Shown piece by piece: positions 33,126 through 49,773 of a stretch of 64,000 nucleotides of DNA. The translations under genes were made by a program, and so were the position numbers. How positions within the stretch are numbered: the first letter of the stretch is position 1; each line of letters starts with the position of its first letter. The notes under the pieces are model-generated. The model was not told the DNA's origin, ran no database searches, and saw only the letters and a program-made list of their open reading frames with translations. Location of the stretch: positions 143,112 through 207,111 of IMG/VR virus record IMGVR_UViG_3300033146_002768; one strand, given 5' to 3'.

Positions 33126-33244
33126 TAATTTTCCCCTTAATCAAATCATTACATTTATTTAATTATATGTTCTATATTTGGAACATTATTACATATAAAA
33201 GAACAAATCTAAAATATAAACATATAATATATAAGGAGTTTAAA

Positions 33245-33787
33245 TTGAATACTTTTTTCACATCAGATCAACATTTTGAACACAGAGCTATTATAGATCA
33301 TTGTCAACGACCATTTGTTAGTACCAAACATATGAAAAACATTATTAAAAAATGTTGGAATAGAGTTGTTAAAGAAGAAGATAAGGTATATGTGGTTGGA
33401 GATTTTTCTTTACAATCTCCAAAATTAAGACAAATATTTAAACAAATTTTAGACAATCTAAATGGAAGAAAAATATTAGTTGTTGGCAATCATGAAGTTG
33501 ATAAAATATTCTTTTATGCTGGAGATCATGGAATAGGATTTGAACAAGTAGTATATCCTTATTTAGAAGTTGAGGAATTTGTGCTTTGTCATGATCCAAC
33601 ATTATCAATAGTATTGCCTGATAGACCTTTCATAGTTGGTCATGTTCATCAAATGTGGCATACATTAAGAAATTGTTATAATGTCGGAGTTGATGTAAAT
33701 GACTTCACTCCAGTTTCAATTGAAACTATAAGAGAACATTTTAGAAACAATACAGACATTAAAGTGGAGGCAAAAATTGAAACTTGA
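33245..33787 (+). CDS. Calcineurin-like metallophosphoesterase
   Basis: SDQHFEH, VGDF, GNHE, CHDP, GHVH. Probable TTG start after AAGGAG. Confidence 0.85.
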   Translation: MNTFFTSDQHFEHRAIIDHCQRPFVSTKHMKNIIKKCWNRVVKEEDKVYVVGDFSLQSPKLRQIFKQILDNLNGRKILVVGNHEVDKIFFYAGDHGIGFEQVVYPYLEVEEFVLCHDPTLSIVLPDRPFIVGHVHQMWHTLRNCYNVGVDVNDFTPVSIETIREHFRNNTDIKVEAKIET

Positions 33788-34154
33788 ATTGAAACAAAAG
33801 TTAGTAGATAACTATCCTGAAATAATTGATAATGTAGATCATATTATTTATTGTGGAGATGGATGGTACTGGTTGATTGATCACATTTGTGATTGTATTC
33901 AAAGTTATCTTGATAACAATCCACAGGAGCAAATTAAAGCTTTACAAATTAAATCAAAATTTGGTGAGTTAAGTTTTTATATAAATAGTAAGAATGAAAT
34001 TGTAAAAGGAATGATCTGGTTTGCTTCATTTTTATCAAGTCATATGTGTGAGAATTGTGGAACAAGAAAAGATGTATCCAGAGCTAAAGGTAATTGGGTT
34101 ATATACTTATGTCCATCATGTCAAATTATAAGGGAGAAATTAAAAAATGAATGA
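33777..34154 (+). CDS. Phage hypothetical protein with C-terminal CxxC pairs
   Basis: GDGW..LI, QIK.KFG.L.FY, CENCG, CPSC. Confidence 0.6.
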   Translation: MKLELKQKLVDNYPEIIDNVDHIIYCGDGWYWLIDHICDCIQSYLDNNPQEQIKALQIKSKFGELSFYINSKNEIVKGMIWFASFLSSHMCENCGTRKDVSRAKGNWVIYLCPSCQIIREKLKNE

Positions 34155-34635
34155 TTCAAAAACTATTGATTCATTTTCAGGCGAGTATGATTGGCTAAGT
34201 AATTTTTATCCAGTTAGTATTTACTATAAAGGATTATACTGGCAAACATCTGAACATGCTTATCAAGCTTCTAAAACAATGATTCCTGGTGAAATGGATT
34301 GGGTTAGAAATTGTAGAACGCCAGGTCAAGCTAAACGAATGGCATCAAAGAAAAAAGGAAAGATTACTTTAAGACCTGGTTGGGATTCTATGAGATATGA
34401 TGTTATGGTTGAAGTACTTAGAGAGAAATTTAAAAATCCTACTCTTTGGGAAAAACTTTGTTTAACTTTTGGGAAAGTTTTAATTGAAGGTAATCAATGG
34501 CATGATAATTATTGGGGTAATTGTTACTGTCCAGAGTGTGAAAATATAGAAGGATTGAATATGTTAGGTATGGCTTTAACACAAGTTAGGGGTGAACTAT
34601 TTGGTTCAAATGTAAAGAATAAATATGAAACGTAA
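34147..34635 (+). CDS. NADAR (YbiA-like) family protein
   Basis: F....DWLSNFYP, SEHAYQA.K, LIEGN.WHD.YWG, N.LG..L..VR. Confidence 0.92.
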   Translation: MNDSKTIDSFSGEYDWLSNFYPVSIYYKGLYWQTSEHAYQASKTMIPGEMDWVRNCRTPGQAKRMASKKKGKITLRPGWDSMRYDVMVEVLREKFKNPTLWEKLCLTFGKVLIEGNQWHDNYWGNCYCPECENIEGLNMLGMALTQVRGELFGSNVKNKYET

Positions 34636-34804
34636 AGTGGACTTTGTAACTAATAGTTCATCGTGTAGTTATATACTTGGGGTTACAATAAAACAAGTAT
34701 GTAAAAAATATAAACCTGACTGTATAGTTTTTGCAATATGTACACAACCATGCAAAGGAGCTATAAAATATGCTAGAGACCATGGAGAGGAAATAGGATT
34801 ATGA
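34625..34804 (+). CDS. Small protein with MKxxxDFVTNSSS N-terminal motif (not in ORF track)
   Basis: Manual translation MKRKVDFVTNSSSCSYILG...GEEIGL; overlaps both neighbours in typical operon fashion. Confidence 0.65.
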   Translation: MKRKVDFVTNSSSCSYILGVTIKQVCKKYKPDCIVFAICTQPCKGAIKYARDHGEEIGL

Positions 34805-35631
34805 AAGTTTTATATGCAACCGACCTACATGGTCAAACAAATAAGTTCGAAGCAGTATTAAAAGTTATTGATAACCATGATATTTTAATTCTTGGAGCTG
34901 ACATACTCCCAAAAGGTGAAGGAGCTACAGAAAAAAAGATACAAGATTTTATGCACAATTATCTTTTTAATTTCTTTCTAACAGTTAAAATTCCTATTAT
35001 TATAGATTTTGGAAATGATGATTGGGTAATGTATTATAAAAATTTCAAAAAAGTTATTGATATATTTCCTAATGTTCATATATCTCATTTAAATGAGATT
35101 AAAATAGATGAGTATATCTTTATAGGAATGCATTATGTTCCTGATTATCCATTTGGTATTAAAGACTGGTGTAGAATTGATGGTCCGAAAATATGTGACG
35201 ATATTCAATTCGGTGCTCCTTATACTTCAGAGAGTGGTGAGATTAAAATGATTAATGGATTGAGAAAATACTTTCTTGAGAAAAAATCAATCTATGATGT
35301 ATTGAATAGTCTTTCAAAACCAACTGATAAAACAGTTTATTTAATTCATTCACCGCCAAAGTTTTCAGGGTTGGATGTTTGTTTTAGATCAGGTCCAGTT
35401 GGATCAAATGATGTATTTAAATGGATAGAAAAAGAACAACCGTTCTTAACTCTTCATGGTCATATACATGAAAGTTATGAAATGACAAATACAGCAATAA
35501 CAAACATCGGTAAGTCTATTTGTATTAATCCTGGTCAAAAAGGAGGATATGGTTTCACTAATTTTGTATGGTGTGAATTTGATTTGGATGATGTTCAAGA
35601 AACATTCATAAGAAAGGAAATAAAAGAATGA
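34801..35631 (+). CDS. Icc/CpdA-like metallophosphoesterase
   Basis: TDLHG, GAD, GNDD, HSPP, LHGHIHE. Confidence 0.85.
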   Translation: MKVLYATDLHGQTNKFEAVLKVIDNHDILILGADILPKGEGATEKKIQDFMHNYLFNFFLTVKIPIIIDFGNDDWVMYYKNFKKVIDIFPNVHISHLNEIKIDEYIFIGMHYVPDYPFGIKDWCRIDGPKICDDIQFGAPYTSESGEIKMINGLRKYFLEKKSIYDVLNSLSKPTDKTVYLIHSPPKFSGLDVCFRSGPVGSNDVFKWIEKEQPFLTLHGHIHESYEMTNTAITNIGKSICINPGQKGGYGFTNFVWCEFDLDDVQETFIRKEIKE

Positions 35632-36095
35632 ATAAAATGTATTTAGTATTAGGTGACTGGTCAGATGATGGTCATGGTAAGTCTGAGAAGGTTTTAGTTG
35701 AAGTTAATAAAACAGTTGAAGAAGTTCAGAATGCTTATAAAGATTCTTGTAAATTGACTGGTATTTCTTTTAATGGAAATGAAGATTATACTGAAACTGG
35801 AAGACATTGGGAAATAGCTAACAAATATAGAATCGCAGTTGAATATGAAGATTATAAACTATCCGATGCAGTTCTTGAAGTATTAGAAAAGTTTAAATGC
35901 CCAAAAGAAATAATTGAAAATTACAATGAAGAAGCATATGAAGGAAATTATATTCCTTTATGGTTTTGGTTTATTGGACTTTATCTTCCAGATCTTGATT
36001 ACAAAATAATTAAAGAGGGTGATGGAATACCTTGTATAAATGGTTATTGGGATAAAAATTTGAATGTGGGGTTTGGATACGGATTATATCAATAA
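35628..36095 (+). CDS. Hypothetical protein
   Basis: 155 aa ORF in operon. Confidence 0.65.
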   Translation: MNKMYLVLGDWSDDGHGKSEKVLVEVNKTVEEVQNAYKDSCKLTGISFNGNEDYTETGRHWEIANKYRIAVEYEDYKLSDAVLEVLEKFKCPKEIIENYNEEAYEGNYIPLWFWFIGLYLPDLDYKIIKEGDGIPCINGYWDKNLNVGFGYGLYQ

Positions 36096-36105
36096 AGGAG
36101 AAAGG

Positions 36106-36354
36106 ATGGATAAAGATAAAGTACAAAAGATTATAGATTTTTATAACCAAGATGATGTTATAATAATGTATCTTTTAAGAAATGATGATTACCAAGGTTT
36201 GATCGAGGTTGATATCGAAGAAGATGATAGCGGAGATGAACCTATATTTCTTTCACGATCCTCTCACCCAAGAGCTAAAGAATATAATTATTTACATGAA
36301 TGTAATATAGAAGATTTTAGATTTTATAAAAGAGTTGATCTTGAAGGAGATTAA
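36106..36354 (+). CDS. Hypothetical protein
   Basis: Start adjusted to the ATG after an AAGGAG/AGGA RBS. Confidence 0.6.
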   Translation: MDKDKVQKIIDFYNQDDVIIMYLLRNDDYQGLIEVDIEEDDSGDEPIFLSRSSHPRAKEYNYLHECNIEDFRFYKRVDLEGD

Positions 36355-36765
36355 ATGCATTCTAGAGTGAGAGGAGTTAATTGTAAACAACAACAATTGT
36401 TAATGTTAAAACCAGGTATGTTACATTCTCATGCTGTTAGAATAAGAACCCATCGAGGTGAATCTATTTGGTCTTTATTGAAAAATTATATTAATAAAAT
36501 AGACATTAATACTATATTCAATAGAACTGAATTGTTGTCGTGTGTATATGTTCATGAAGTTGTTATAGGCGGAATAACTGCATGCCAAACTACAGTTGAT
36601 CAATATAAAAGATATTTAGTATTAGCTGAGATAGTAGAATCAGCAGGTTGGGGTAAATATAAAAAACTTAAAAACATACCCGAACATTTATCAATAAAAA
36701 AATTACAAAAACATGTATATAATTACGACTGGAGAAGTTGGTTTATATTAATAGAAGATTTATAA
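36355..36765 (+). CDS. Hypothetical protein
   Basis: 136 aa ORF. Confidence 0.55.
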   Translation: MHSRVRGVNCKQQQLLMLKPGMLHSHAVRIRTHRGESIWSLLKNYINKIDINTIFNRTELLSCVYVHEVVIGGITACQTTVDQYKRYLVLAEIVESAGWGKYKKLKNIPEHLSIKKLQKHVYNYDWRSWFILIEDL

Positions 36766-36775
36766 AGGAGAAAAA

Positions 36776-38611
36776 ATGGCTACACAAAGAACAGCGGAAG
36801 CAATTCAGTTAGAGAATGAAGTTAAAACTCATGATCAAGCATACTGGGTTAAAAACAAACCTCTTGTTAATGATGATATTTATGATCAGATTGTCAGGAG
36901 ACTTTTAAAAATCGAACCGGATAATGTATACCTTAATAAACCAAAAGCTCCAAAGGTTGATTCCCAAGGTAAGGTAACTCATTCAATCCCTATGTTAAGT
37001 CTTGATAAAGAATATGACTTTGATGGTATTCTAAAATTCTGTAAAAGAGTATGTAGAAGTTTGGATGAAAAACTTAAAGTAATGTTTAAGTTTGATGGAG
37101 TATCTGGTCAACTTATGTTTGATATTCTTGCCTCAAGAGGTGACGGTGATATCGGAGAAGACATTACACATAAACTTCCTTTTATGAATATTCTTACAAA
37201 AGGAGATCCAAACTTTGTACGAGGAGAAATTCTTTTCACCAAATCAAAGTTTAAAGAGATCAAAGGTGTCGTTACCAGAAAGAATGGTGAAGATTATAAG
37301 AATGAAAGAAACGCCGTTGGTGGTGTATTGAGTCGGGATGATATGGAACCTGTTCAAGTCCTTACCTTTGTTGACTTTGAATATATTTGCAAAGAGTTTA
37401 CTCATGCTGAAATTATTGAACTTGGTGCTTATGGATGGCAAGGTATTGTTGAAGAAGCAAAGGAATCAAATTTTCCAACTGATGGACTTGTTATAAAAGT
37501 TGCTGATGAAGAATATGCAAAAACTCTCGGTGAAACAAGACATCATTCAAAATCTGCTACTGCATTTAAATTTGCTAATCCTGGTGCCTGGTCTGTATTA
37601 AGAAGTGTTTTATTCAGTCCTGGTAAACATGATATAACTCCAGTTGGTAAGATTGATCCTGTTGAAATAACAGGTGTATCAGTTGCTAGTCCATCTCTCC
37701 ATAACTGGAAAAATATTCTTGACCGTGATTTACAAATTGGAGATGAGATTTGGGTTGAAAGAGCAGGTGATGTTATACCTTATATTTCAGCATCTAAACC
37801 AGGTAAAGAAAGAACTCCAATTGAGATACCTCCATGTCCTGTATGTGGTGGAGATGTTGCATATGTAGACCCTCAGTTGGTTTGTGTTAATGATGATTGC
37901 CCGGGTAAACTCTTAAATAAATTATCTGATGCAGTTATTAGAATTGGGATTGACCGTCTTGGTAAACCCACTATTCAAAAGATGATTGATACACATAACA
38001 TTGAAAACTTGGTTGATATATTCTCATTATCAATGGATGATCTTTTAAAGATGGAAAGATTTGGAAAAACATCTGCTGCTAATCTTTATAATGAAATTGA
38101 TAAGGTTAGACAAGGTGGAGCATATGAATGGCAGTTCCTTGCATGTTTAAATATTCAAGGAATCGGAAGAAGTTTAAGTAAAGATCTTTTGGTTGATAGA
38201 TCAATTTCTGATCTTGCTAAAATGACTGACGATATGTTAACTAAACTTCCAAATATTGGGGATGAGCGAGCTCATGTTTTAATTGAAGGAATTAGAAATA
38301 ACTGGGAGTATCTCAAAATATTAAATCAGATAATTCCTTTAAAAGTTGCTGAGGTTAAAGAAGATATTAATGAAGATGCTATAAAGATTTGTTTCACTGG
38401 TCGATTCCCTGAAAATAAAAAAGTTTATTATGATCTCTTAGAAGAGAAAGGTGGATATGATATTATGAATAAAGTTACAACTCTTACTGAAGTTTTAGTT
38501 GTTGCTGATCCATCTAAGGAATCAAATAAAACAAAATCAGCAAAGAAGAAAGGGATTAAAATTATTGGGATTGATGAATTGTTTGGAGGTGTAGATATTG
38601 GATCAGCTTAG
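36776..38611 (+). CDS. ligA: NAD-dependent DNA ligase
   Basis: H..PMLSL, KFDG adenylation motif, SRGDG..GEDIT, DGLVIK, A.K, ERAGDVIP, C..C zinc finger, HhH, BRCT. Confidence 0.96.
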   Translation: MATQRTAEAIQLENEVKTHDQAYWVKNKPLVNDDIYDQIVRRLLKIEPDNVYLNKPKAPKVDSQGKVTHSIPMLSLDKEYDFDGILKFCKRVCRSLDEKLKVMFKFDGVSGQLMFDILASRGDGDIGEDITHKLPFMNILTKGDPNFVRGEILFTKSKFKEIKGVVTRKNGEDYKNERNAVGGVLSRDDMEPVQVLTFVDFEYICKEFTHAEIIELGAYGWQGIVEEAKESNFPTDGLVIKVADEEYAKTLGETRHHSKSATAFKFANPGAWSVLRSVLFSPGKHDITPVGKIDPVEITGVSVASPSLHNWKNILDRDLQIGDEIWVERAGDVIPYISASKPGKERTPIEIPPCPVCGGDVAYVDPQLVCVNDDCPGKLLNKLSDAVIRIGIDRLGKPTIQKMIDTHNIENLVDIFSLSMDDLLKMERFGKTSAANLYNEIDKVRQGGAYEWQFLACLNIQGIGRSLSKDLLVDRSISDLAKMTDDMLTKLPNIGDERAHVLIEGIRNNWEYLKILNQIIPLKVAEVKEDINEDAIKICFTGRFPENKKVYYDLLEEKGGYDIMNKVTTLTEVLVVADPSKESNKTKSAKKKGIKIIGIDELFGGVDIGSA

Positions 38612-38621
38612 GAGGAATTAA

Positions 38622-38750
38622 GTGGATAGTATAATTATTACTTGGAATCAAATAGCTATAGCTATGACAGTAAGCTATTTGTTAGGATTATCAACTTTCT
38701 ATATTTCATGGAAATGGATTGATAGAAAAATTAAAAATAGAGTTAATTAA
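38622..38750 (+). CDS. Small membrane protein (GTG start, not in track)
   Basis: AGGAGG RBS; 42 aa with one hydrophobic helix. Confidence 0.5.
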   Translation: MDSIIITWNQIAIAMTVSYLLGLSTFYISWKWIDRKIKNRVN

Positions 38751-38763
38751 AGGAGAGTAAAAA

Positions 38764-39588
38764 ATGGACGTTAGATTACTAGTTATTGATGCACAAGTAG
38801 ATTTTTGTGAACCAGGTGATGTTGATAAAGGAATACCACCAGGAGCACTTTATGTTACTGGAGCAGAAGATGATTGTGAAAGAACTGCTTTAATGATTGA
38901 TAGACTTGGTAAACGGATCAATATGATTTATGCTACATATGATAGCCATAGTCAATTTCAGATTTTTCATCCTATGTTCTGGATGCGAAAAGATGGACAG
39001 TCAGTTAATCCGTTTGATCTTATTACATATGCTGATATTGAGTCCGGTGATATCAGTCCGGTGAATCCTGCTTTAAGAGACTGGTGTTTGTTTTATACTA
39101 AATCTCTTGAAGATGGTGGAAGATATCCTCTTGTAATTTGGCCATACCATTGTCTAATTGGAACACCTGGCTGGAACATGAATAAACAAATTATGGCTTC
39201 TATCCATCAGTGGGAAAGAGATACTTATCGTATCTACAAACCGATTACCAAAGGATCCAACTTTAAAACTGAACATTATTCAGCAGTTAAAGCTGAGGTT
39301 GAAGTACCTGAAGATGTTACAACTCAGTTGAATGATAAAGGTCTTATTAAACCTTTGGAACAAGCAGATGTTATTGCAATTTGTGGTCAGGCGCGTAGTC
39401 ATTGTGTTGCTAATACTGTTCGTGATATTATGGCAAACTTTTCCGATCCTTCTTATATCAAGAAGCTTTATATTCTTGAAGATGCAATGTCTGATGTTGC
39501 TACGTTTGAACATCTCGGTGATACCTTCTTTGAAGATTTTTTGAAGGCTGGCGGAAATATTACAACAACAAAGAAATTTCTTGTATAG
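38764..39588 (+). CDS. pncA: Nicotinamidase/isochorismatase-family hydrolase
   Basis: LLVIDAQVDFC, GALYV, DSH, WPYHC..GT.G, KG, SHCV catalytic set. Confidence 0.8.
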   Translation: MDVRLLVIDAQVDFCEPGDVDKGIPPGALYVTGAEDDCERTALMIDRLGKRINMIYATYDSHSQFQIFHPMFWMRKDGQSVNPFDLITYADIESGDISPVNPALRDWCLFYTKSLEDGGRYPLVIWPYHCLIGTPGWNMNKQIMASIHQWERDTYRIYKPITKGSNFKTEHYSAVKAEVEVPEDVTTQLNDKGLIKPLEQADVIAICGQARSHCVANTVRDIMANFSDPSYIKKLYILEDAMSDVATFEHLGDTFFEDFLKAGGNITTTKKFLV

Positions 39589-39597
39589 GAGAAAAAA

Positions 39598-40335
39598 ATG
39601 GAATTTGAAATACCTGAAAATACTGCGTTTACTTTTTCTGGAGATGACCCAGAAGATATTAAAGATCCTTCTGATGAATATACACTGGTTTCAATTGCAG
39701 AAGATGTAAGTCCTTCAACCAGTGGTGTAAGACAATTGATGTGTGATGGAAAAAAGATTGTTAACCAGGCATGTAAGAAAAATCCAAGAGTTGATAAATT
39801 GATGATTCATTACACAAAGTTTGGATCCAGCATTGAAGAAGATCATGGATTTAAACCAGTTTCTGAAATTGATGAAAATGATTATCAACCTTCCATGACT
39901 ATCGGTGGATCAACTTGTCTTTATGATGCTACATATAATTCTCTTGCAGCACTTCAAAGATATGCAGAGATCCTTGATAAATCTGATATCGGTTGTAATG
40001 GTATTGCTTTTGTTTATACTGACGGGATGGATAATGCTTCAACCCTTGGTCCTCAGTCAATTGTTGATAAACTTGAGGAAATCAAAATGAAGGAAATCAT
40101 GGAATCCGTGAAAATTATTGTTATTGGATTTTATGATTCAAATGCATCTTATGCTGCAGAGATTAAACAATATCTTGAAGACTTTGTACATGATATTGGG
40201 CTTGATCAATTTGTTGATATTGGAAGTTTGACTCCAGCTCAGGCAGCCAAAACATTTGGATTTGTCAGTCAATCAATCTCTTCTCAAAGTCAACATCTTG
40301 GTACAGGCGGTCCTTCACAGAACCTAACATTTTAA
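39598..40335 (+). CDS. vWA domain protein (TerY-like)
   Basis: DVSPS (MIDAS-like), GG.T.LYDA, TDGMDN.S. Confidence 0.8.
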   Translation: MEFEIPENTAFTFSGDDPEDIKDPSDEYTLVSIAEDVSPSTSGVRQLMCDGKKIVNQACKKNPRVDKLMIHYTKFGSSIEEDHGFKPVSEIDENDYQPSMTIGGSTCLYDATYNSLAALQRYAEILDKSDIGCNGIAFVYTDGMDNASTLGPQSIVDKLEEIKMKEIMESVKIIVIGFYDSNASYAAEIKQYLEDFVHDIGLDQFVDIGSLTPAQAAKTFGFVSQSISSQSQHLGTGGPSQNLTF

Positions 40336-40345
40336 TTAAACATTT

Positions 40346-40381
40346 GGGGAGTCTTAGAGGATTAGAGACTCCCCATTTTTC
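40346..40381 (+). terminator. Rho-independent terminator
   Basis: GGGGAGTCT...AGACTCCCC followed by ATTTTTT. Confidence 0.75.
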
Positions 40382-40392
40382 CGGAGGTAGAA

Positions 40393-40842
40393 ATGAAAAT
40401 AATTGTTAAAAAACCGATTCCAACAAAAGAACTCCCAACTGATACATATCAAATTCATATTAAAAGTATGCATGGCGATGCTGATGCATATACCGAGCAA
40501 ACAAGATTACTTTCAACTATTGATGATGTCATTCAGTATATTAAATTCTTATCAACTGTTTGGACAATGACTGGTGATGAATATAATGATAGTGAAGTTA
40601 GAAAAGCAGTAAAGGAATCCGCAGAAGAATTGGACATACCTGGACATGGTGAAGATATGTGGATGGATTTAGTTGATTTTGATCAGACACGTAATAGCTC
40701 ATATGCTGCTGTAGATGAAATTTGGGTAACTTACTTTAATAGTCGTGGTGTGGAATTTACTGTTGAAATAGAACTTGGTGATAAAGTTCATGATAAGATA
40801 TGTGATTATAAATATAAGGAATATTTTAAAAATGAACATTGA
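40393..40842 (+). CDS. Hypothetical protein
   Basis: 149 aa with GGAGG RBS. Confidence 0.65.
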   Translation: MKIIVKKPIPTKELPTDTYQIHIKSMHGDADAYTEQTRLLSTIDDVIQYIKFLSTVWTMTGDEYNDSEVRKAVKESAEELDIPGHGEDMWMDLVDFDQTRNSSYAAVDEIWVTYFNSRGVEFTVEIELGDKVHDKICDYKYKEYFKNEH

Positions 40843-41716
40843 TACTTTTTTAAAAATAGGACATAGTCATACTATATGTCAGGATTATATCTTGTCTGGT
40901 GATGACCCTTGTCCTTATATCATTCTCGCTGATGGTTGTTCACAAGCAAAGGATAGTGATATAGGAGCAAGGATTTTATGTCATTCAGCTTTAGAAGTTT
41001 TAACAACAATTCAAAGTTATATGGCTTCTGTTGATCCTGTTGAATTAGGTCAATGGATTATTAATCGAGCTATGAATGTTAAAAAATATTTTCATACTAA
41101 AGTTGATTGTCTTGATGCGACTTTGATTATAGCATATCAATTTAATAAAGATTATTATGTTTATATGTATGGAGATGGAGTAATATATACTATTGATCAC
41201 GATGGTAATAGTAGAGCATACAGAAGATATTACAAACCAAATGCTCCAGCGTATCTTAGATATAGAGTTGCTGGTTATGGTAATTACAAAAACTCTAATA
41301 TTGCTTCATTTATGGAAATATCTGGAATATGTGATCAAGTTGAAGATGATATTATGACTCCATACTTCCATAAGTTTTATAAAGGTGATGTGAAAGATTT
41401 AATGATAGCAAGTGATGGTGTTGAATCGTTTGTGTATAAAGAGAAAGTTAGATATAAAACTCTTTATTTTGAATTATTGAAAGCAATGAAAGATAGTAAT
41501 CCTCATTTGATTAGTGGAGTTGATATTCCAAATATTTATAGACCCGACACTTTGGAAATGGATTATCAAAAAGTTATAAGTGACATGTCAACTTTCAAAT
41601 TGACTAAAGGTACCTTCTTAAGTAGACGAGTAAAGAAGGTTATGAGAAATTATCTAAAAGAAGGTTTTATAAATGATGATGACCTTTCGATAGGTTGTTT
41701 TCATGAGGAAAATTAA
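40832..41716 (+). CDS. PP2C-like protein phosphatase
   Basis: G.SH..CQDY, ILADGCS, D.GA, YGDG, IASDG, DDLS. Start adjusted to 40832. Confidence 0.85.
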   Translation: MNIDTFLKIGHSHTICQDYILSGDDPCPYIILADGCSQAKDSDIGARILCHSALEVLTTIQSYMASVDPVELGQWIINRAMNVKKYFHTKVDCLDATLIIAYQFNKDYYVYMYGDGVIYTIDHDGNSRAYRRYYKPNAPAYLRYRVAGYGNYKNSNIASFMEISGICDQVEDDIMTPYFHKFYKGDVKDLMIASDGVESFVYKEKVRYKTLYFELLKAMKDSNPHLISGVDIPNIYRPDTLEMDYQKVISDMSTFKLTKGTFLSRRVKKVMRNYLKEGFINDDDLSIGCFHEEN

Positions 41717-42067
41717 ATGCAGTATAATATCAATATTAGTTATCAAACTGGTAGTAGTTTTCATACTGAAGAATGTGAGGAACTCATAGAACGTGACTGG
41801 AAAGATGTTGATAAAGTAAAAGAATGTTTACAACGAATACAAAATCATTATGAATTTTATCAAAAATATAGTAATATGTATTCAAAACCAAAAGTTAAAA
41901 TTCCAAAAGGTGTTGTATGGGACGAGGATTATAAACAAATTTCATTAGAATTAATAGATGATAATGGAAAACCTTTTCGATATTCAAATTTTTGGACTGG
42001 ATATTTTGAAAAACTTCATATTGCTGAAATTATAATATCGGATAAAGGAATGAGGTATGAACCATGA
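41717..42067 (+). CDS. Hypothetical protein
   Basis: 116 aa ORF. Confidence 0.6.
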   Translation: MQYNINISYQTGSSFHTEECEELIERDWKDVDKVKECLQRIQNHYEFYQKYSNMYSKPKVKIPKGVVWDEDYKQISLELIDDNGKPFRYSNFWTGYFEKLHIAEIIISDKGMRYEP

Positions 42068-43779
42068 AATATTCTATAAAAGGAAAACCAGATGTTAAAC
42101 TTGTTGGTAACGATTTTGTAACATCAGGTGGAGAAGCTAAGATATTTAGAAGGAACAATATTATATATAAAATATATCATACTCCTTCTGAGATGATTCC
42201 TGACGCCAAAATATATGAACTCCAAGAGATAACCGAACCTAATGTATTAATCCCTAAAGAAATAATAACTGACGTTAAGGGGGTTAGGGTAGGGTTTACA
42301 ATGGATTTCGTTGATAACGTTACCCCTTTATGTAAACTATTTACAAACGCGTTTATAAACCAAAATAACGTGTCCAATGATACAATCGTTGCTTTAGTTG
42401 CTGGGATGCAAGAAACAATTTTAAAGATTCATGAAACCAAATCCAAGTGTATTCAAGTGGATGGTAATGAATTAAATTATCTTGTAAGTGAAAGAGATTT
42501 TAAAAAATGTTATTTCATTGATGTAAATTCTTACCAAACTAAATCATTTCCTGCCACCGTTATAATGCCTTCCATTCGTGACTGGTCATCAAAAGTATTT
42601 AATGAATTAACTGACTGGTTTTCATTTGCTATAATTGCATGTCAATTGTTTGTCGGGACTCATCCGTATAAAGGAAAACACCCTGACTTTAAAAGACATG
42701 ATATGATAAATAGAATGAAAGCAAATGTTTCTATATTTAATCAATTTGTCACGACACCAAAGTCTGTTAGAAATTATGACAGAATACCAGTAAAGTATAT
42801 GGACTGGTTCCTTGATTTGTTTGAAAAAGGTAAACGGTTATTGCCTCCAAAAGATTATGGAGAATGGAACTCTAAGGTGAGTTATATAGTAGTAACATCA
42901 ACTGATAACTTTGTTATTGAAGAGATCAATACTCATATAGCATATGATGAAGCTATTATTGCTCATACTAATATAAATGGAAACCCAATAACTAGAACTA
43001 AAAAATCTATTTATGCTGGGTCTCAGAAACACAGAGTGGGTACTAATGTTGATGTAGTCCATACACCAACTTCAATGTGTCCTGTAGTAGTTAAAATAGA
43101 ACATGATATGCTTCATATTTTATCTTTAGATCCAACAAAAAATGTTGATTTAGGATCTCAGATATCTGCTGAAAAAATCATGATTGTTGATGATACTATT
43201 TATCTTAAATCAGAAGGTAATTTAGTAGAGATGAGATTTATGGATGGAACACATCTCTCTCAAATTTTATTAATTACAAAAACAGTTTGGTCTATATCTG
43301 AAAAATCATCTCAATTATTTAAAAATATAATAGTTGAAGATTTATTAGGATCGAAGCATGTTTCTATTCCATTACCAAATAAAGCTCAGAGTCAACTTAT
43401 AAGAAAACGAGTTGTTGAGCTTGATGATTATAAAGTGTTGGATGGAAAATATAGACAAGATGTTGCAATATTTTCTGTGTTCAATCAAACATCTTTGGAA
43501 TATAAATTGTTGGTATTAACTGGTATTACAACTAATCAGTATAATGTTAGAATCATAAATACTGTAGATTCAAATGCAGTTAACTTTGTTACACTTGACA
43601 ATGGTATTGTTATTTTAATTTATGATGATCAGATGGAAATCTTTAGTAATAAGCCATCATCTACAAAAGTTAAAATAATAAAAGATAAAGAATTAAATTC
43701 TGATATGACTCTTTGTAAACGAGGAGTATCAACAAGATTCTTTAGTGGTACTAAACTTTATAGTATCGGAATGAAATAA
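42064..43779 (+). CDS. Ser/Thr protein kinase-like protein (TerY-P kinase type) with long C-terminal region
   Basis: SGGEAKI, YKIYH, VDGNELNYLV, FIDVNSYQ, DWFSFAII..QLF.G.HPYKG. Confidence 0.85.
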   Translation: MKYSIKGKPDVKLVGNDFVTSGGEAKIFRRNNIIYKIYHTPSEMIPDAKIYELQEITEPNVLIPKEIITDVKGVRVGFTMDFVDNVTPLCKLFTNAFINQNNVSNDTIVALVAGMQETILKIHETKSKCIQVDGNELNYLVSERDFKKCYFIDVNSYQTKSFPATVIMPSIRDWSSKVFNELTDWFSFAIIACQLFVGTHPYKGKHPDFKRHDMINRMKANVSIFNQFVTTPKSVRNYDRIPVKYMDWFLDLFEKGKRLLPPKDYGEWNSKVSYIVVTSTDNFVIEEINTHIAYDEAIIAHTNINGNPITRTKKSIYAGSQKHRVGTNVDVVHTPTSMCPVVVKIEHDMLHILSLDPTKNVDLGSQISAEKIMIVDDTIYLKSEGNLVEMRFMDGTHLSQILLITKTVWSISEKSSQLFKNIIVEDLLGSKHVSIPLPNKAQSQLIRKRVVELDDYKVLDGKYRQDVAIFSVFNQTSLEYKLLVLTGITTNQYNVRIINTVDSNAVNFVTLDNGIVILIYDDQMEIFSNKPSSTKVKIIKDKELNSDMTLCKRGVSTRFFSGTKLYSIGMK

Positions 43780-43858
43780 ATGAAAGTTATGGATCATTGA
43801 AGAAATTCTGATACAGATGAAACTAAAAAAATTAAGAACTTGAAAAAGGAGAAAAAGA

Positions 43859-44203
43859 ATGATAACATTTATGTTAGGTGTTTTAGGAAGTGTGATGTTT
43901 TGGTGTATATTTATTCCGATTGATTTTGTTATTGCCATGATGGTTTTAAAGAATATATTTCCAAATGCTTTAAGACCTTTTACAGAAAATAAAAGAGTAT
44001 ATAATTCTTGTTGGGGAGCAAATTGTGATTCATATTTATTTGCTGCTCTTATGGTATTAGTATATACATTATTTTGGTATATAATTATTGTAGGGTTTAT
44101 ATTTTATAAACTTTGTTGTTTCATTTTCCCAGCATTTAAAACTCTTTTTATAAAATTAATAAAAGCAATTCCTGTTATTACAATTAATAAAGTGGAGGAG
44201 TAA
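43859..44203 (+). CDS. Membrane protein
   Basis: Two long hydrophobic segments. Confidence 0.65.
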   Translation: MITFMLGVLGSVMFWCIFIPIDFVIAMMVLKNIFPNALRPFTENKRVYNSCWGANCDSYLFAALMVLVYTLFWYIIIVGFIFYKLCCFIFPAFKTLFIKLIKAIPVITINKVEE

Positions 44204-44208
44204 GAAGA

Positions 44209-45381
44209 ATGATTAAATCATTATGTGATACCGACCTGTATAAATTTACAATGATGCAGGTCGTATTTGAAAAGTATACTTCTGCTCATGTTCGTTATGA
44301 TTTTAAATGTAGAAGTGGTAATATTCTGGAAAATCTTGGTAATAATAAATTTAGATTTATAGTTGATGTAACTAAGGCTATACATGAGTTATGTGAATTA
44401 AAATTCATAAAAGAAGAATTAGAATATTTTGAAAAGATTAGATTTTTCAAACCAAACTTTATTGAATTTCTTAGAACATTTCAACTCAATGAAAATTATA
44501 TTAGAATCAATGAAGAGAATGATGATTTAAGTATTATCATTGAAGGACCTTGGATTTCAACAATTCTTTTTGAGGTTCCAATTCTTGCAATTGTAAGTGA
44601 AACATATCATAAATATCATGATACAGTTGCTACTGCATTGATAACAGGTCAAGAAAAATTTAAAGAAAAAATACAATATCTTGATAATCATATTCATAGA
44701 GATTCTGATTTGAGAATTAATGACCTTGGAACCAGAAGAAGATTTTCATATGATCATCAGTTGGAAATATTGAGAAATGCATGTCATAGTAGATATATTA
44801 AAGGAACATCAAATGTTCACTTTGCAATGAAACTTGGTTTAACTCCAGTTGGTACTATGGCTCATGAGTATATTTGTGCACATCAACAATTAGGTCGTGT
44901 TGAGGATTCTCAGAAAACTGCATTTCAAGTTTGGTCAGATGTATACCGCGGAGAAAATGGTATTGCTTTATCTGATACTGTTGGGTCTAATGCTTTTTTT
45001 AGAGACTTTGATTTATATTTTGCAAAGTTATTCGATGGAGCAAGACATGATTCAGGTGATCCTTACTGGTGGTGTGAACGACTTATTAACCATTATAATA
45101 GTTTAGGAATTGACCCAAAATCTAAGATAGCAGTATTTAGTGATGGATTAACTTTTCCAATTATTGTTGATTTATTTAAAGTTTTTAATAACCAAATAAA
45201 AACATCATTTGGTATTGGGACTAATCTAACTAATGATTGTGGGGTTGACCCTTTACAAATAGTTATGAAAATGACTGAATGTAATGGGAGACCTGTGGCT
45301 AAAATATCCGACTCAGAAGGTAAAGGTATGTGTCGTGATGCTGGATTTGAAAGATATATAAAAGGAATATTTGATGTCTGA
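44209..45381 (+). CDS. pncB: Nicotinate phosphoribosyltransferase
   Basis: DTDLYKFTM, DLGTRRR, GTSN, GTMAHE, LSDT, G.RHDSGDP, FSDGL, FGIGT.L, K....NG.PVAK.SD. Confidence 0.93.
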   Translation: MIKSLCDTDLYKFTMMQVVFEKYTSAHVRYDFKCRSGNILENLGNNKFRFIVDVTKAIHELCELKFIKEELEYFEKIRFFKPNFIEFLRTFQLNENYIRINEENDDLSIIIEGPWISTILFEVPILAIVSETYHKYHDTVATALITGQEKFKEKIQYLDNHIHRDSDLRINDLGTRRRFSYDHQLEILRNACHSRYIKGTSNVHFAMKLGLTPVGTMAHEYICAHQQLGRVEDSQKTAFQVWSDVYRGENGIALSDTVGSNAFFRDFDLYFAKLFDGARHDSGDPYWWCERLINHYNSLGIDPKSKIAVFSDGLTFPIIVDLFKVFNNQIKTSFGIGTNLTNDCGVDPLQIVMKMTECNGRPVAKISDSEGKGMCRDAGFERYIKGIFDV

Positions 45382-45491
45382 AGAAAAAAAGATTGATATC
45401 ACTAAAATTAAATTGAGGGTTAGTGATATTCCAGGAACTGGAAAAGAAATATTTGCTTTCATTGATCAGCCAATAGACATAGGAGAAGACT

Positions 45492-46382
45492 ATGAACGAT
45501 TATAATTTACTTACTATTCAAAATATTGCCCGTGTAAGACATAATATTATTTTAAATACATGTGATTATCTAAAAAAATATTCAAATATTGAATGTCTTG
45601 TTTTGGGTGTTTCTGGTGGAGCTGATAGTGCTCTTGTTGCTCAACTGGCACATGAAGTTTGTGAAATGATGAAAACTGATTATTATGGTCGTAGAAACAT
45701 TCAATTAATTGGGCGAAGTTTACCTATCATGACTAATAAAGTAGATGAACTTAAAAGAGCTAATCAAGTTGGAACATTGATATGTGATGATTTTGATACT
45801 ATTAGTTTAGATGCTTCTTATGAACATTTAGCTGAAACATGTGGGTTTGAGGGTAATTCAAAAAGAGAAACTGCACGCACCAAAGCTATTCGATATGGAA
45901 ATATTAAAGCAAGAATTAGAATGGTTTATCTTTATAATCTTGCCCAACTTAATAGAGGTATGGTATTATCAACTGATAACTATACTGAATATATTCTTGG
46001 GTTTTGGACGCTTCATGGAGATGTTGGTGATTTTGGAATGATTCAAAATTTGTGGAAAACTGAAGTATATATTATGTTAGATTCTATTAGTCGTCATTAT
46101 GTTTATAGTGAGATGAAAGAACTTTCTGATACCTTGAAGTCATGTCGTGATGCTATACCAACTGATGGTCTTGGTATAACTGAATCTGATCTTGATCAGT
46201 TTGGAGGAATTAATTCTTATGAAGAAATTGATTTAATCTTTATTGAGATGATGAATAATGGTTATAGTAAGTTTATTCAACAGGGTGAAATTCCAGAAGT
46301 ATTAACTATGTTTGAAAGGACTAAATATAAAAGAGAAAATCCTTTTAACATTCCACGAAAAAATATGCTGGAGAAATTATGA
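45492..46382 (+). CDS. nadE: NH3-dependent NAD+ synthetase
   Basis: LGVSGGADS, NIKARIRM..LY, STDN.TE...GFWT..GD, L.K.EV, PTDGL. Confidence 0.93.
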   Translation: MNDYNLLTIQNIARVRHNIILNTCDYLKKYSNIECLVLGVSGGADSALVAQLAHEVCEMMKTDYYGRRNIQLIGRSLPIMTNKVDELKRANQVGTLICDDFDTISLDASYEHLAETCGFEGNSKRETARTKAIRYGNIKARIRMVYLYNLAQLNRGMVLSTDNYTEYILGFWTLHGDVGDFGMIQNLWKTEVYIMLDSISRHYVYSEMKELSDTLKSCRDAIPTDGLGITESDLDQFGGINSYEEIDLIFIEMMNNGYSKFIQQGEIPEVLTMFERTKYKRENPFNIPRKNMLEKL

Positions 46383-46813
46383 AAGTAGCATTTGATGTTC
46401 ATGGTACGATTGATGATGCCTCATTTATATCTAAATCTACCATGCGAATGATGTTGAAAATCTTTATGGATTCTGGTTTAGATATTTATATTATCTCAGG
46501 ACCGCCAGAAGAGCAAATTCATAAAGAATTAAAAAAGCTTGGGTATATTGAGGGAACTCATTTTCATTATGATAATGTATTTTCTGTTGTTGACTTTATC
46601 AGATTTAATACTGATGTTAAAATGACTCAAGATGAAAAAGGGTACTGGTGGTGTGATGAAACCTTTTGGTGGGATTCAAAGGGAATAATATGTGAAAAGT
46701 TTGGTATTGATATTATGTTTGATAATGATATTAGATATAAAAAGAATATGCCACACATAACAAAATTTATTCATTGGGAGAAATATAGTGGGAAAAAAAA
46801 TAATAACATATAA
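46379..46813 (+). CDS. HAD-superfamily-like hydrolase
   Basis: VAFDVHGTID motif I variant, ISG, MFDND. Confidence 0.6.
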   Translation: MKVAFDVHGTIDDASFISKSTMRMMLKIFMDSGLDIYIISGPPEEQIHKELKKLGYIEGTHFHYDNVFSVVDFIRFNTDVKMTQDEKGYWWCDETFWWDSKGIICEKFGIDIMFDNDIRYKKNMPHITKFIHWEKYSGKKNNNI

Positions 46814-47210
46814 CGACTATGATCATTTGCTTGATAAACTCATTGATAAAATTGATGGTCATTCTATTCATGGAGAATTAAAATATGTATACGGTCCTCC
46901 AAGAGGAGGATTGCCAATAGCAGTTCATCTTTCACATCATCTTGGTCTTGAATTTGTAACTAAACGAGATATATGTGAATGGTTAAATATGGACGAATTG
47001 CAAAAAGTATTGTTAGTTGATGATATAGCAGATACTGGTAAAACTTTACATGAAATAAAAGACGAAGAAGGAATTGATTTTATTACAGCAACTCTATATT
47101 ATAAACCAAGATCAATTATTAAACCTGACTTCTTTGTTGAAGAAACTACAGAATGGTGTTGTTTCCCTTGGGAGAGGTTAGATGAAGAACCAAATAGGGA
47201 AGGATATTAA
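46788..47210 (+). CDS. Type I phosphoribosyltransferase (Gpt/Hpt-like)
   Basis: GPPRGGL, LLVDDIADTGKTL, FPWE. Confidence 0.85.
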   Translation: MGKKIITYNDYDHLLDKLIDKIDGHSIHGELKYVYGPPRGGLPIAVHLSHHLGLEFVTKRDICEWLNMDELQKVLLVDDIADTGKTLHEIKDEEGIDFITATLYYKPRSIIKPDFFVEETTEWCCFPWERLDEEPNREGY

Positions 47211-49600: not shown

Positions 49601-49634
49601 AAAAGAGAGACCTCATTTGTTGGGGTCTTTTTTT
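49601..49634 (+). terminator. Rho-independent terminator
   Basis: AGACCTCA-TTTGT-TGGGGTCT plus T-run. Confidence 0.7.
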
Positions 49635-49657
49635 GTATTAATTTAATGAGTTACCTT

Positions 49658-49673
49658 CTATATATATTAATAA
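49658..49673 (+). promoter_or_regulatory. CTATATATATTAATAA motif, copy 3
   Basis: Exact match to 32327..32342. Confidence 0.5.
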
Positions 49674-49762: not shown

Positions 49763-49773
49763 ACTCCACATTA

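What the first reader, a model, noticed from the sequence alone, without database searches (positions are those of the whole stretch)
34147..46382. Candidate Preiss-Handler-type NAD+ reconstitution pathway (PncA-PncB-NadE) with NADAR and NAD-dependent ligase
Seen: nicotinamidase, nicotinate PRTase, NH3-dependent NAD synthetase, NADAR and LigA all lie in the early block. Established: SIR2/TIR-type defences (Thoeris, DSR, SIR2-HerA) destroy NAD+ to nicotinamide plus ADPR. The described phage counter-pathways NARP1 (Adps/Namat) and NARP2 (Nampt/Nmnat) use different enzymes. Inference: a deamidating third route, Nam to NA to NaMN to NaAD to NAD. No NaMN adenylyltransferase is visible in this window, so it must be elsewhere or host-derived.
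Basis: partly seen in the sequence, partly recalled or inferred. Interest (0 to 1): 0.72.

Follow-up and report, generated by a model that had tools for sequence, protein, structure and literature searches.

The report
Phage nicotinamide-to-NAD salvage genes with signalling triad
A large T4-like phage carries three of the four enzymes that turn nicotinamide back into NAD+; the fourth (NadD) is missing here, and its nicotinamidase belongs to a widely conserved four-gene cassette with a vWA protein, a PP2C phosphatase and a protein kinase that I found described in no paper.

Summary
No NaMN adenylyltransferase (NadD, NadM or NadR) exists anywhere in the 207 kb record, which is about 66% complete. 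The closest relative has a bona fide NadD between NADAR and LigA; this phage carries a metallophosphoesterase and two small ORFs in that slot. The deamidating Nam-to-NAD reading is therefore plausible, but it needs host NadD or the unsequenced part of the genome.

The idea is not new as a kind. Preiss-Handler clusters (pncB-nadD-nadE) with LigA in jumbo phages were described computationally in 2024, and "NARP3" now names PnuC plus NadR. A counter-defence role for this route is untested.

With the nicotinamidase they form a co-oriented cassette conserved in 73-77 of 80 viral loci (reciprocally 73 of 80). It occurs in unrelated phage lineages and in bacterial chromosomes. PncB and NadE are frequent but optional neighbours. 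The triad's role is unknown.

The parts
33167..33787 (+). Phosphoesterase-family protein (206 aa), peripheral to the module
   Evidence: phrog_547 'phosphoesterase', 128 bits. No Pfam hit. A homolog lies near the cassette in 10 of 80 loci.
34147..34635 (+). NADAR-domain protein (162 aa). This is an ADP-ribose/N-glycoside-processing family, not an NAD-synthesis enzyme.
   Evidence: PF08719 74.8 bits (cut-off 35.1); TIGR02464 84.8 (cut-off 73.7). Near the cassette in only 6 of 80 and 11 of 80 loci.
34801..35631 (+). Metallophosphoesterase (276 aa). Together with the two small ORFs at 35628-36354 it occupies the slot where the closest relative has NadD plus a 226 aa ORF.
   Evidence: phrog_1649 48 bits; Metallophos_2 27.4 bits. 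Synteny comparison with L020. No homolog in any of the 80 related loci.
36776..38611 (+). NAD+-dependent DNA ligase LigA (611 aa), an NAD+ consumer
   Evidence: DNA_ligase_aden, OB, HHH_5 and BRCT; Nlig-Ia listed; TIGR00575 331 bits, below its 444 cut-off; K105 'KFDG' and Cys354/357/370/375. 67% identical to the L020 ortholog.
38764..39588 (+). Divergent nicotinamidase (PncA-like, 274 aa) with a family-specific insertion of roughly residues 70-125. First gene of the conserved cassette.
   Evidence: Invariant D9/K163/C214 and D60/H62/H129, with H69 nearly invariant, in 39 sequences. These align to M. tuberculosis PncA D8/K96/C138 and H71. Model pLDDT 92.4. The top 18 PDB fold matches are all nicotinamidases. 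Family of at least 996 proteins.
39598..40335 (+). vWA-domain protein (245 aa) with an intact MIDAS motif and a conserved Ser-rich C-terminal tail. Second cassette gene.
   Evidence: ESM Atlas feature and structure matches to VWA clusters, TM 0.71-0.89. D36-x-S38-x-S40, T106, D142 and S224/S226/S228/S231 are conserved. VWA_2 hits 10 and VWA hits 8 of 24 family members. Next to PncA-like in 77 of 80 loci.
40393..40842 (+). Small ORF (149 aa) of unknown function, a variable insert within the cassette
   Evidence: phrog_8562, unknown function. Conserved only in the closest relative, at 35% identity.
40832..41716 (+). PP2C-type protein phosphatase (294 aa as called by JGI; a TTG at 40775 would give 313 aa). 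Third cassette gene.
   Evidence: PF13672 PP2C_2 53.6 bits (cut-off 24). In 73 of 80 and 78 of 80 loci.
41717..42067 (+). Small ORF (116 aa), a variable insert, possibly an HNH-type nuclease
   Evidence: phrog_10176 73 bits; weak PtuB (HNH) hit, E 7e-4. Absent from all 80 related loci.
42064..43779 (+). Ser/Thr protein kinase (residues 1-255) fused to a C-terminal beta-propeller (273-571). Fourth cassette gene.
   Evidence: Invariant G22, G23, K36, D133, N138 and D153, with E52 nearly invariant. The family profile hits only kinases in the PDB. Pkinase hits 16 of 22 family members. Model pLDDT 88.6. Best fold matches are LRRK2 (kinase plus WD40), kinases and propellers. ESM Atlas agrees. In 73 of 80 loci.
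44209..45381 (+). Nicotinate phosphoribosyltransferase PncB (390 aa)
   Evidence: NF003704 495 bits (cut-off 379); TIGR01514 420 (cut-off 270). NAPRTase_N plus NAPRTase. 'GTMAHE' motif. It is the only NAPRTase-family gene in the record.
45492..46382 (+). NH3-type NAD synthetase NadE (296 aa, single domain)
   Evidence: TIGR00552 102.7 (cut-off 63.65). PP-loop SGGADS. Best PDB matches are NH3-dependent NAD synthetases. No CN-hydrolase domain.
46379..47210 (+). Two small ORFs downstream of NadE: 144 aa of unknown function, and a 140 aa type-I phosphoribosyltransferase-fold protein. Role unknown.
   Evidence: Pribosyltran 43.5 bits; phrog_8995 'phosphoribosyl transferase' and phrog_13623. Both are conserved in the closest relative only.
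49602..49803 (+). Two intrinsic-terminator-like hairpins that close the + strand block
   Evidence: a 14-pair and a 10-pair stem, each followed by a T-run. Between 33 and 49.6 kb the only + strand hit is one weak 6-pair site at 40097. The total number of hits equals the shuffle expectation, so this is weak evidence.

Best explanation
The block is a phage-borne, incomplete Preiss-Handler (deamidating) NAD+ salvage module.

Proposed steps:
1. The phage nicotinamidase converts nicotinamide to nicotinate. Nicotinamide is released by NAD-consuming enzymes and by host NADase defences.
2. PncB converts nicotinate plus PRPP and ATP to NaMN.
3. NaMN is adenylylated to NaAD by an enzyme this record does not encode. 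The most likely source is host NadD; otherwise a gene in the missing third of the genome.
4. The phage's NH3-type NadE amidates NaAD to NAD+.

The product supplies the phage's own NAD+-dependent ligase and buffers the NAD+ pool during infection. That buffering could also blunt NAD-depleting defences.

The nicotinamidase is not a free-standing gene. It is the first gene of a conserved four-gene cassette with a vWA/MIDAS protein, a PP2C phosphatase and a Ser/Thr kinase fused to a beta-propeller. I infer that this triad is a phosphorylation switch that controls or accompanies nicotinamide salvage. PncB, NadE and NadD are optional add-ons that different phages have gained or lost.

Shown here: gene identities, conserved catalytic residues, folds, synteny, co-occurrence, and the absence of NadD.
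Inferred: every enzymatic activity, the dependence on host NadD, the physiological purpose, and any role of the triad.
For: - Gene identities: PncB and NadE score above curated equivalog cut-offs.
- Nicotinamidase: complete triad and metal site across 39 sequences; nicotinamidase fold, model pLDDT 92.4, top 18 PDB matches all nicotinamidases.
- LigA has the NAD-specific Ia domain and the KxDG motif.
- The closest relative (67-81% identity for LigA, PncA, vWA, kinase and PncB; 47-57% for NADAR, PP2C and NadE; same gene order) has NadD (TIGR00482 121.3, cut-off 112.45) between NADAR and LigA. It therefore encodes the complete four-step set in one block.
- Enrichment: among 36 viral records with the cassette, a NAPRTase-family gene occurs in 20 and NadE in 22; in near-complete records, 11 and 13 of 18. 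By comparison, PncB hits 13 of 50,697 phage records.
- PncB is often inserted inside the cassette. It directly follows the cassette in Capsulimonadaceae chromosomes.
- Cassette conservation: vWA 77, PP2C 73 and kinase 73 of 80 loci, against 5-10 of 80 for the flanking genes. The reciprocal test gives 73 of 80.
- The cassette spans T4-like and non-T4 phages and bacterial chromosomes.
- Prior computational description of phage Preiss-Handler clusters with LigA: PMC11662467.
Against: - No adenylyltransferase is present in 207 kb, so the phage cannot run the route alone.
- The nicotinamidase scores below the Pfam and NCBIfam cut-offs, and no activity has been measured.
- About 40% of near-complete cassette-bearing phages lack PncB, so the cassette does not need a phage PncB.
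- NadE is absent from the bacterial cassette loci within 10 kb.
- NADAR and LigA are rarely adjacent to the cassette elsewhere.
- No physical link between the nicotinamidase and the vWA protein could be shown; the complex prediction gave no answer.
- A four-step, ATP-costly route is a slow way to counter acute NAD+ depletion compared with NARP1 or NARP2.
Confidence: 0.6

Rival explanations
1. Dedicated counter-defence. The module exists specifically to rebuild NAD+ from the nicotinamide released by SIR2, TIR or SEFIR NADase defences, as a functional analogue of NARP1-3.
For: NAD+ reconstitution by phages is an established counter-defence for NARP1/2 (paper) and NARP3. The route starts from nicotinamide, which is the product of those NADases. 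NADAR, a family with anti-ADP-ribosylation roles, and two phosphoesterases sit in the same block.
Against: No experiment exists, and no paper links PncA, PncB and NadE to defence escape. The same cassette plus PncB sits among ordinary genes in bacterial chromosomes, which a pure anti-defence device would not explain. The route needs four steps and host NadD. The published view of such clusters is general NAD+ supply for phage enzymes.
Confidence: 0.3
2. The nicotinamidase-vWA-PP2C-kinase cassette is a signalling or conflict system in its own right, similar in architecture to TerY-P. In this reading the nicotinamidase acts as sensor or effector by removing nicotinamide. That could relieve product inhibition of NAD-consuming enzymes, or deny nicotinamide to a competitor's Nampt- or Namat-based pathway. 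PncB and NadE would be secondary neighbours.
For: The four genes are linked far more tightly to each other than to PncB or NadE: 73-77 of 80 against 24 and 12 of 80. About 40% of near-complete cassette phages have no PncB. vWA plus PP2C plus kinase is the TerY-P architecture, for which stand-alone anti-phage activity has been reported. The cassette moves between phage lineages and bacteria.
Against: The PADLOC TerY-P models do not hit any of the three proteins. The kinase carries a beta-propeller, not the zinc ribbon or OB fold of TerY-P. PncB is strongly enriched and is sometimes inserted inside the cassette, which argues for metabolic continuity. The enzyme keeps a full catalytic site, so it is not a mere sensor.
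Confidence: 0.25
3. Francisella-type variant. The divergent NadE amidates NaMN directly to NMN (NMN synthetase), and NMN is then adenylylated by a host NMN adenylyltransferase (NadR, NadM or NadD).
For: This NadE is divergent: 102.7 bits, against 189-224 for some relatives. Entry 3fiu is among its PDB matches; that this entry is the Francisella NMN synthetase is from my memory, since the PDB title says only NH3-dependent NAD synthetase. LigA itself releases NMN (established enzymology), so an NMN-centred economy is conceivable.
Against: The best PDB matches are ordinary NaAD-using NAD synthetases: 4xfd at 68.8 bits and 3p52 at 63.1, against 52.4 for 3fiu. The closest relative pairs the orthologous NadE with a NadD-type enzyme, which fits the classical order. 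Substrate choice cannot be read from these data.
Confidence: 0.1
4. No functional unit. The NAD genes are independently acquired auxiliary metabolic genes that merely sit together in a variable region of a large phage.
For: The region is mosaic: the NadD slot has been swapped, and small ORFs (149 and 116 aa) are inserted in the cassette. NADAR and LigA adjacency is rarely conserved.
Against: PncB is extremely rare in phages overall but frequent near this nicotinamidase. PncB and NadE co-occur in 11 of the 12 NadE-containing loci. The gene order is conserved down to 39% identity and across phage lineages and bacteria.
Confidence: 0.05

Closest known systems
Preiss-Handler gene clusters of 'NAD-jumbo phages' (pncB-nadD-nadE, e.g. 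Kuafu_71; Microbiome 2024, PMC11662467)
   Same: Large phage; PncB and NadE clustered; NAD-dependent ligase in the same genome. The proposed purpose is also the same: phage-controlled NAD+ supply. Both descriptions are computational only.
   Different: This record lacks NadD, which defines a 'complete' pathway in that paper. It adds the nicotinamide entry step through a phage-type PncA. That PncA is embedded in a vWA-PP2C-kinase cassette, which my term search of the paper and reading of its section 17 did not turn up.
Bacterial Preiss-Handler / nicotinamide salvage pathway (PncA, PncB, NadD, NadE)
   Same: Same enzyme families for steps 1, 2 and 4. PncB and NadE pass NCBI's equivalog cut-offs. 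The nicotinamidase keeps the triad, the metal site and the fold.
   Different: Step 3 is missing. The nicotinamidase is about 80 residues longer than classical PncA, with an inserted segment, and falls below the family HMM cut-offs.
NARP2 (Nampt + Nmnat) and NARP1 (Adps + Namat), phage NAD+ reconstitution pathways
   Same: They start from nicotinamide and end in NAD+. They are phage-encoded.
   Different: Different enzymes and intermediates, since this route is deamidating. No Nampt, Nmnat or PRPP-synthetase-like gene is found. NARP1 and NARP2 are experimentally shown to be counter-defences; this route is not.
NARP3 (PnuC + NadR; Sci Adv 2026, PMC13464706)
   Same: A phage-encoded route that restores NAD+ using classical bacterial salvage families.
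   Different: NARP3 imports nicotinamide riboside. This record has no PnuC and no NadR-type nucleotidyltransferase.
TerY-P triad (TerY-like vWA + PP2C + Ser/Thr kinase; Anantharaman et al. 2012 and Gao et al. 2020, as summarised in PMC11090510)
   Same: The same three domain types in one co-oriented unit. The vWA protein has an intact MIDAS motif. The unit is found in mobile contexts.
   Different: The kinase is fused to a beta-propeller rather than a zinc ribbon or OB fold. There are no hits to the PADLOC TerY-P models. The unit is always joined to a nicotinamidase and often to PncB.

Membership tests
Nicotinamidase (PncA/Pnc1; isochorismatase-like hydrolases) | Catalytic triad Asp-Lys-Cys | tested here: met
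   D9, K163 and C214 are invariant in 39 family members. They align to D8, K96 and C138 of M. tuberculosis PncA.
Nicotinamidase (PncA/Pnc1; isochorismatase-like hydrolases) | Metal site (Asp plus His residues) that binds the pyridine nitrogen. This site distinguishes nicotinamidases from other isochorismatase-fold enzymes. | tested here: met
   D60, H62 and H129 (in the 'WPxHC' motif) are invariant and H69 is nearly invariant. The alignment directly covers H129, matching M. tuberculosis H71. The other three are assigned from motif spacing.
Nicotinamidase (PncA/Pnc1; isochorismatase-like hydrolases) | Fold | tested here: met
   Model pLDDT 92.4. The 18 best Foldseek PDB matches are all nicotinamidases, with TM by target 0.71-0.77 except 0.49 for the longer Drosophila entry.
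Nicotinamidase (PncA/Pnc1; isochorismatase-like hydrolases) | Score above the curated family HMM cut-off | tested here: not met
   PF00857 20.3 bits (cut-off 27); NF008623 25.2 (cut-off 174). This is a divergent subfamily with an insertion.
Nicotinamidase (PncA/Pnc1; isochorismatase-like hydrolases) | Deamidation of nicotinamide to nicotinate | not testable with these tools
   Needs an enzyme assay.
Nicotinate phosphoribosyltransferase PncB | Equivalog HMM score; N-terminal plus catalytic domains | tested here: met
   NF003704 495.4 (cut-off 379); TIGR01514 419.7 (cut-off 269.55); PF17767 plus PF04095.
NH3-dependent NAD synthetase NadE | NAD_synthase domain above cut-off, PP-loop SGGxDS, no glutaminase domain | tested here: met
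   TIGR00552 102.7 (cut-off 63.65). SGGADS is present in a 296 aa single-domain protein. Preference for NaAD over NaMN was not testable.
NAD+-dependent DNA ligase LigA | Ia domain, adenylation domain with KxDG, OB, Zn finger, HhH, BRCT | tested here: met
   The equivalog score (331) is below the cut-off (444), so this is a divergent LigA.
Complete Preiss-Handler pathway ('NAD-jumbo phage' criterion of PMC11662467) | NaMN adenylyltransferase (NadD, NadM or NadR) encoded by the phage | tested here: not met
   The only PF01467 hit in the record is RfaE-domain-II-like. It is orthologous to the relative's HldE-like gene. No hit with phage NMNAT-like or NadD proteins. The record is about 66% complete, so absence from the whole virus is not proven.
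NARP1 | Adps (PRPP-synthetase-like) plus Namat | tested here: not met
   No Pribosyltran_N match. The single NAPRTase-family gene is a PncB equivalog.
NARP2 | Nampt plus Nmnat | tested here: not met
NARP3 | PnuC transporter plus NadR | tested here: not met
   No PF04973 match and no NadR-type nucleotidyltransferase.
TerY-P triad | vWA plus PP2C plus Ser/Thr kinase in one unit | tested here: met
TerY-P triad | Kinase fused C-terminally to a zinc ribbon or OB fold; sequence membership in TerY-P models | tested here: not met
   The C-terminal domain is a beta-propeller. There are no PADLOC hits at E <= 0.01.

The most novel reading that the evidence does not exclude
The nicotinamidase-vWA-PP2C-kinase(beta-propeller) cassette is a previously undescribed, phosphorylation-gated nicotinamide-processing system shared by large phages and bacteria.

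In phages it would be the regulated entry point of a fourth NAD+ reconstitution route: Nam to NA to NaMN to NaAD to NAD, with PncB, NadD and NadE as modular add-ons, switched on when NADase defences release nicotinamide.

In bacteria the same unit could instead drain nicotinamide away from phage Nampt- or Namat-based pathways.
Probability: 0.25. Interest if true: 0.85.

Novelty: new variant of a known kind. Interest (0 to 1): 0.6.

Why it matters
NAD+ is a central battleground between bacteria and phages. Three phage NAD+ reconstitution pathways have been shown experimentally, and none of them uses the deamidating route.

This locus and its relatives show that many large phages carry that route in modular form. 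They also show that its nicotinamide-entry enzyme is almost never alone: it travels with a kinase, a phosphatase and a vWA protein, in hundreds of viral and bacterial genomes.

If the triad gates nicotinamide salvage, it would be the first example of phospho-signalling control of NAD+ recycling in phage-host conflict. It would also give a concrete four-gene unit to test.

If the triad does not do this, the locus is one more NAD-jumbo-phage-type gene set. Its distinguishing feature would be that it depends on host NadD.

Tried and rejected
- Megablast of the block against 50,697 phage records: no match.
- Single-sequence locus search in viral contigs: nothing. An alignment was needed.
- RfaE-domain-II-like nucleotidyltransferase (G000:136119-136403) as the missing NaMN adenylyltransferase: rejected. 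Its best model is heptose-1-P adenylyltransferase. It is orthologous to the C-terminal half of the relative's HldE-like gene, and that relative also has a separate NadD.
- Search of all own ORFs with divergent phage NMNAT-like proteins, with five bona fide phage NadDs, and with an HxGH-type motif: nothing significant.
- PADLOC TerY-P models on the triad: no hits.
- vWA family profile against PDB sequences: no hits. The assignment rests on the Atlas matches, the MIDAS motif and Pfam hits of family members.
- Predicted nicotinamidase-vWA complex: no answer, so it is not used as evidence either way.
- Promoter and terminator scan: counts equal the shuffle expectation, so operon structure and 'early' timing remain unverified.
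- Whole-record searches of the ENA contigs behind L016 and L018: those records are not held.
- Major capsid protein tblastn against phages at E <= 1e-20: no match, so the lineage and host remain unassigned. No tRNAs in the window.
- Idea that the flanking phosphoesterases parallel the phage phosphatase that counters aRES: not pursued. [quoted passage not shown]

Full report
**Where the window lies.** The window is the last 64 kb of a 207,111 bp linear viral contig from a JGI metagenome (Ga0366841_1000030). CheckV estimates 66% completeness. GC content is about 28%. The phage has a T4-type major capsid protein (Gp23) and a prohead protease just downstream of the block. Its capsid protein has no close relative among 50,697 deposited phage genomes, and the block has no nucleotide match there.

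**The observation.**
- NADAR (34147-34635) passes both the Pfam and NCBIfam cut-offs.
- LigA (36776-38611) has the Ia, adenylation, OB, HhH and BRCT domains, the KxDG lysine (K105) and a four-cysteine cluster. It is divergent: TIGR00575 scores 331 against a cut-off of 444.
- PncB (44209-45381) passes two NCBI models above their curated cut-offs: the subfamily model NF003704 (495 against 379) and the equivalog TIGR01514 (420 against 270).
- NadE (45492-46382) passes TIGR00552 (102.7 against 63.65). It has the SGGADS PP-loop and is a single-domain, hence NH3-type, enzyme.

The weak point was 'PncA' (38764-39588), which scores only 20-25 bits to family models. I tested it in three ways.
1. A search of 5.8 billion proteins found at least 996 relatives of about 266 aa.
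2. In an alignment of 39 of them, the residues matching the catalytic triad of M. tuberculosis PncA (D9, K163, C214) and its metal site (D60, H62, H129) are invariant, and H69 is nearly so.
3. An AlphaFold model (pLDDT 92.4) has nicotinamidases from eight organisms as its 18 best PDB matches.

It is therefore a divergent nicotinamidase with a family-specific insertion. Its activity remains inferred.

**The missing step.** The only cytidylyltransferase-superfamily gene in the whole record lies 7 kb upstream of the window. Its best match is RfaE domain II, heptose-1-phosphate adenylyltransferase, at 172.9 bits. It is 41% identical to the C-terminal half of an HldE-like gene in the closest relative. 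It stands among small unknown genes.

Searches with divergent phage NMNAT-like proteins, with five bona fide phage NadDs and with a motif found nothing. The record also has no PRPP synthetase-like gene, no Nudix, no PnuC and no second NAPRTase-family gene. That excludes NARP1, NARP2 and NARP3.

**What the closest relative shows.** A 202.7 kb IMG/VR contig (L020, G001) has the same gene order. Identity is 67-81% for LigA, PncA, the vWA protein, the kinase and PncB, and 47-57% for NADAR, PP2C and NadE. Between NADAR and LigA it carries a 230 aa protein that passes the NadD equivalog model (TIGR00482 121.3 against 112.45).

That relative therefore encodes all four steps in one 16 kb block. In the window the same slot holds a metallophosphoesterase (34801-35631) and two small ORFs that have no counterpart in any related locus. 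NadD has been swapped out here, or it lies in the missing third of the genome. Host NadD is the most likely supplier of this step; that statement rests on general knowledge that NadD is near-universal in bacteria.

**The unexpected part.**
- The 245 aa protein is a vWA domain with an intact MIDAS motif and a conserved serine-rich tail.
- The 294 aa protein is a PP2C phosphatase.
- The 571 aa protein is a Ser/Thr kinase with all catalytic residues, fused to a beta-propeller.

Using the nicotinamidase alignment as a probe, I fetched 80 viral loci with identity down to 39%.

| Gene within 10 kb of PncA-like | Loci (of 80), |
|---|---|
| vWA | 77 |
| PP2C | 73 |
| Kinase | 73 |
| PncB | 24 |
| NadE | 12 |
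| NADAR | 6 |
| LigA | 5 |

The vWA, PP2C and kinase genes are co-oriented with PncA-like and mostly in the same order. The low counts for NADAR and LigA serve as an internal control showing that this is not general genome collinearity.

The reciprocal probe with the kinase gave PncA-like in 73 of 80 loci. Of the 7 exceptions, 4 are truncated loci and 2 are records where one search placed the gene just beyond the flank. Only 12 of 36 cassette-bearing records have a T4-type capsid.

The cassette also occurs in bacterial genomes, with at least 582 hits. In Capsulimonadaceae chromosomes it is followed directly by PncB and is flanked by ordinary genes. It is therefore a mobile four-gene unit shared by cells and viruses.

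**Link to NAD salvage.** Genome-wide, 20 of 36 cassette-bearing viral records have a NAPRTase-family gene and 22 have NadE. Among near-complete records the counts are 11 and 13 of 18. At least five have an enzyme passing the NadD model and a sixth scores just below its cut-off. By comparison, PncB hits only 13 of 50,697 deposited phage records. PncB is inserted inside the cassette in several loci. This supports a metabolic connection between the nicotinamidase and the Preiss-Handler enzymes. It also shows that PncB, NadE and NadD are optional.

**Most likely function.** The block is a modular, here incomplete, deamidating NAD+ salvage set. It feeds the phage's NAD-dependent ligase and buffers NAD+ during infection. 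It depends on host NadD or on an unsequenced phage gene. The role of the triad is unknown. I favour a phosphorylation switch tied to nicotinamide salvage, but the evidence for that is only genomic linkage. A predicted nicotinamidase-vWA complex gave no answer.

No paper in the library links PncA, PncB and NadE to defence escape. The presence of the cassette in ordinary bacterial chromosomal contexts argues against a purely anti-defence role.

**Comparison with what is known.** A 2024 Microbiome paper described 174 'NAD-jumbo phages' that encode complete salvage or Preiss-Handler pathways. These include pncB-nadD-nadE clusters, and more than half of the phages have an NAD-dependent ligase. That work is computational only. 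NARP3 (2026) is PnuC plus NadR.

Three things differ here:
- the nicotinamide entry step uses a phage-type PncA;
- that PncA is obligately linked to a TerY-P-like triad, which fails the TerY-P membership tests on the kinase fusion and on sequence models;
- NadD is absent.

I found no paper describing this cassette.

**Verdict.** I classify the finding as a new variant of a known kind. The pathway idea on its own is of modest interest. The conserved nicotinamidase-signalling cassette makes the locus worth an experiment.

Noticed in passing
G000:C1:136119-136403 (-), outside the window (locus L001:1411-1854): Stand-alone 147 aa RfaE-domain-II-like (heptose-1-phosphate adenylyltransferase-type) nucleotidyltransferase, with no kinase domain and no heptose-pathway genes nearby. 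The closest relative has a full 462 aa HldE-like bifunctional gene instead. This may point to ADP-heptose or another nucleotide-sugar chemistry in these phages.
   Followed up: partly
window 34801-36354: A metallophosphoesterase (276 aa) plus two small ORFs replace the NadD plus 226 aa pair of the closest relative, between NADAR and LigA. None of the three has a homolog in the 80 related loci. A second phosphoesterase (phrog_547) lies at 33167-33787. Their substrates are unknown; ADP-ribose-type nucleotides are one possibility.
   Followed up: partly
window 46379-47210: Downstream of NadE lie a 144 aa ORF of unknown function and a 140 aa truncated type-I phosphoribosyltransferase-fold protein (phrog_8995). 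Both are conserved only in the closest relative. Function unknown.
   Followed up: no
window 40393-40842 and 41717-42067: Two small ORFs interrupt the otherwise conserved cassette. The 116 aa ORF has a weak HNH/PtuB-like hit and is absent from all related loci, which suggests a homing-endonuclease-type insertion.
   Followed up: no
Loci L102, L103, L105, L106, L110, L112-L114, L124, L127 (relatives): Many cassette-bearing huge phages encode nucleotidyltransferases with a CoaD-type 'DPxTxGH' motif (L112's motif is 'DPFHNGH'). L112 passes the phosphopantetheine adenylyltransferase model (TIGR01510 131.7, cut-off 103.3) and L124 scores just below it (96.8). The others are judged by motif alone. 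This hints at phage-encoded CoA metabolism.
   Followed up: no
L263:6286-9288 (-), Capsulimonadaceae chromosome, directly upstream of the bacterial cassette: A 1000 aa protein with a WGR domain and an ATP-dependent DNA ligase domain sits divergently next to the bacterial PncA-vWA-PP2C-kinase-PncB unit. WGR domains occur in PARP-type NAD-consuming enzymes (from my knowledge). The adjacency was not tested in other genomes.
   Followed up: no
G000:C1:120429-120758 (-), outside the window: A 152 aa ORF with a sub-threshold Macro-domain match (19.6 bits, cut-off 22). It may be another ADP-ribose-processing gene in this phage.
   Followed up: no
window 1-32000 and 50000-64000: Genes run on the - strand on both sides of the + strand block. 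GC content is very low (21-25%) between 8 and 26 kb, and GC skew switches sign at about 32 kb and about 52 kb. There are no tRNA genes in the window.
   Followed up: no
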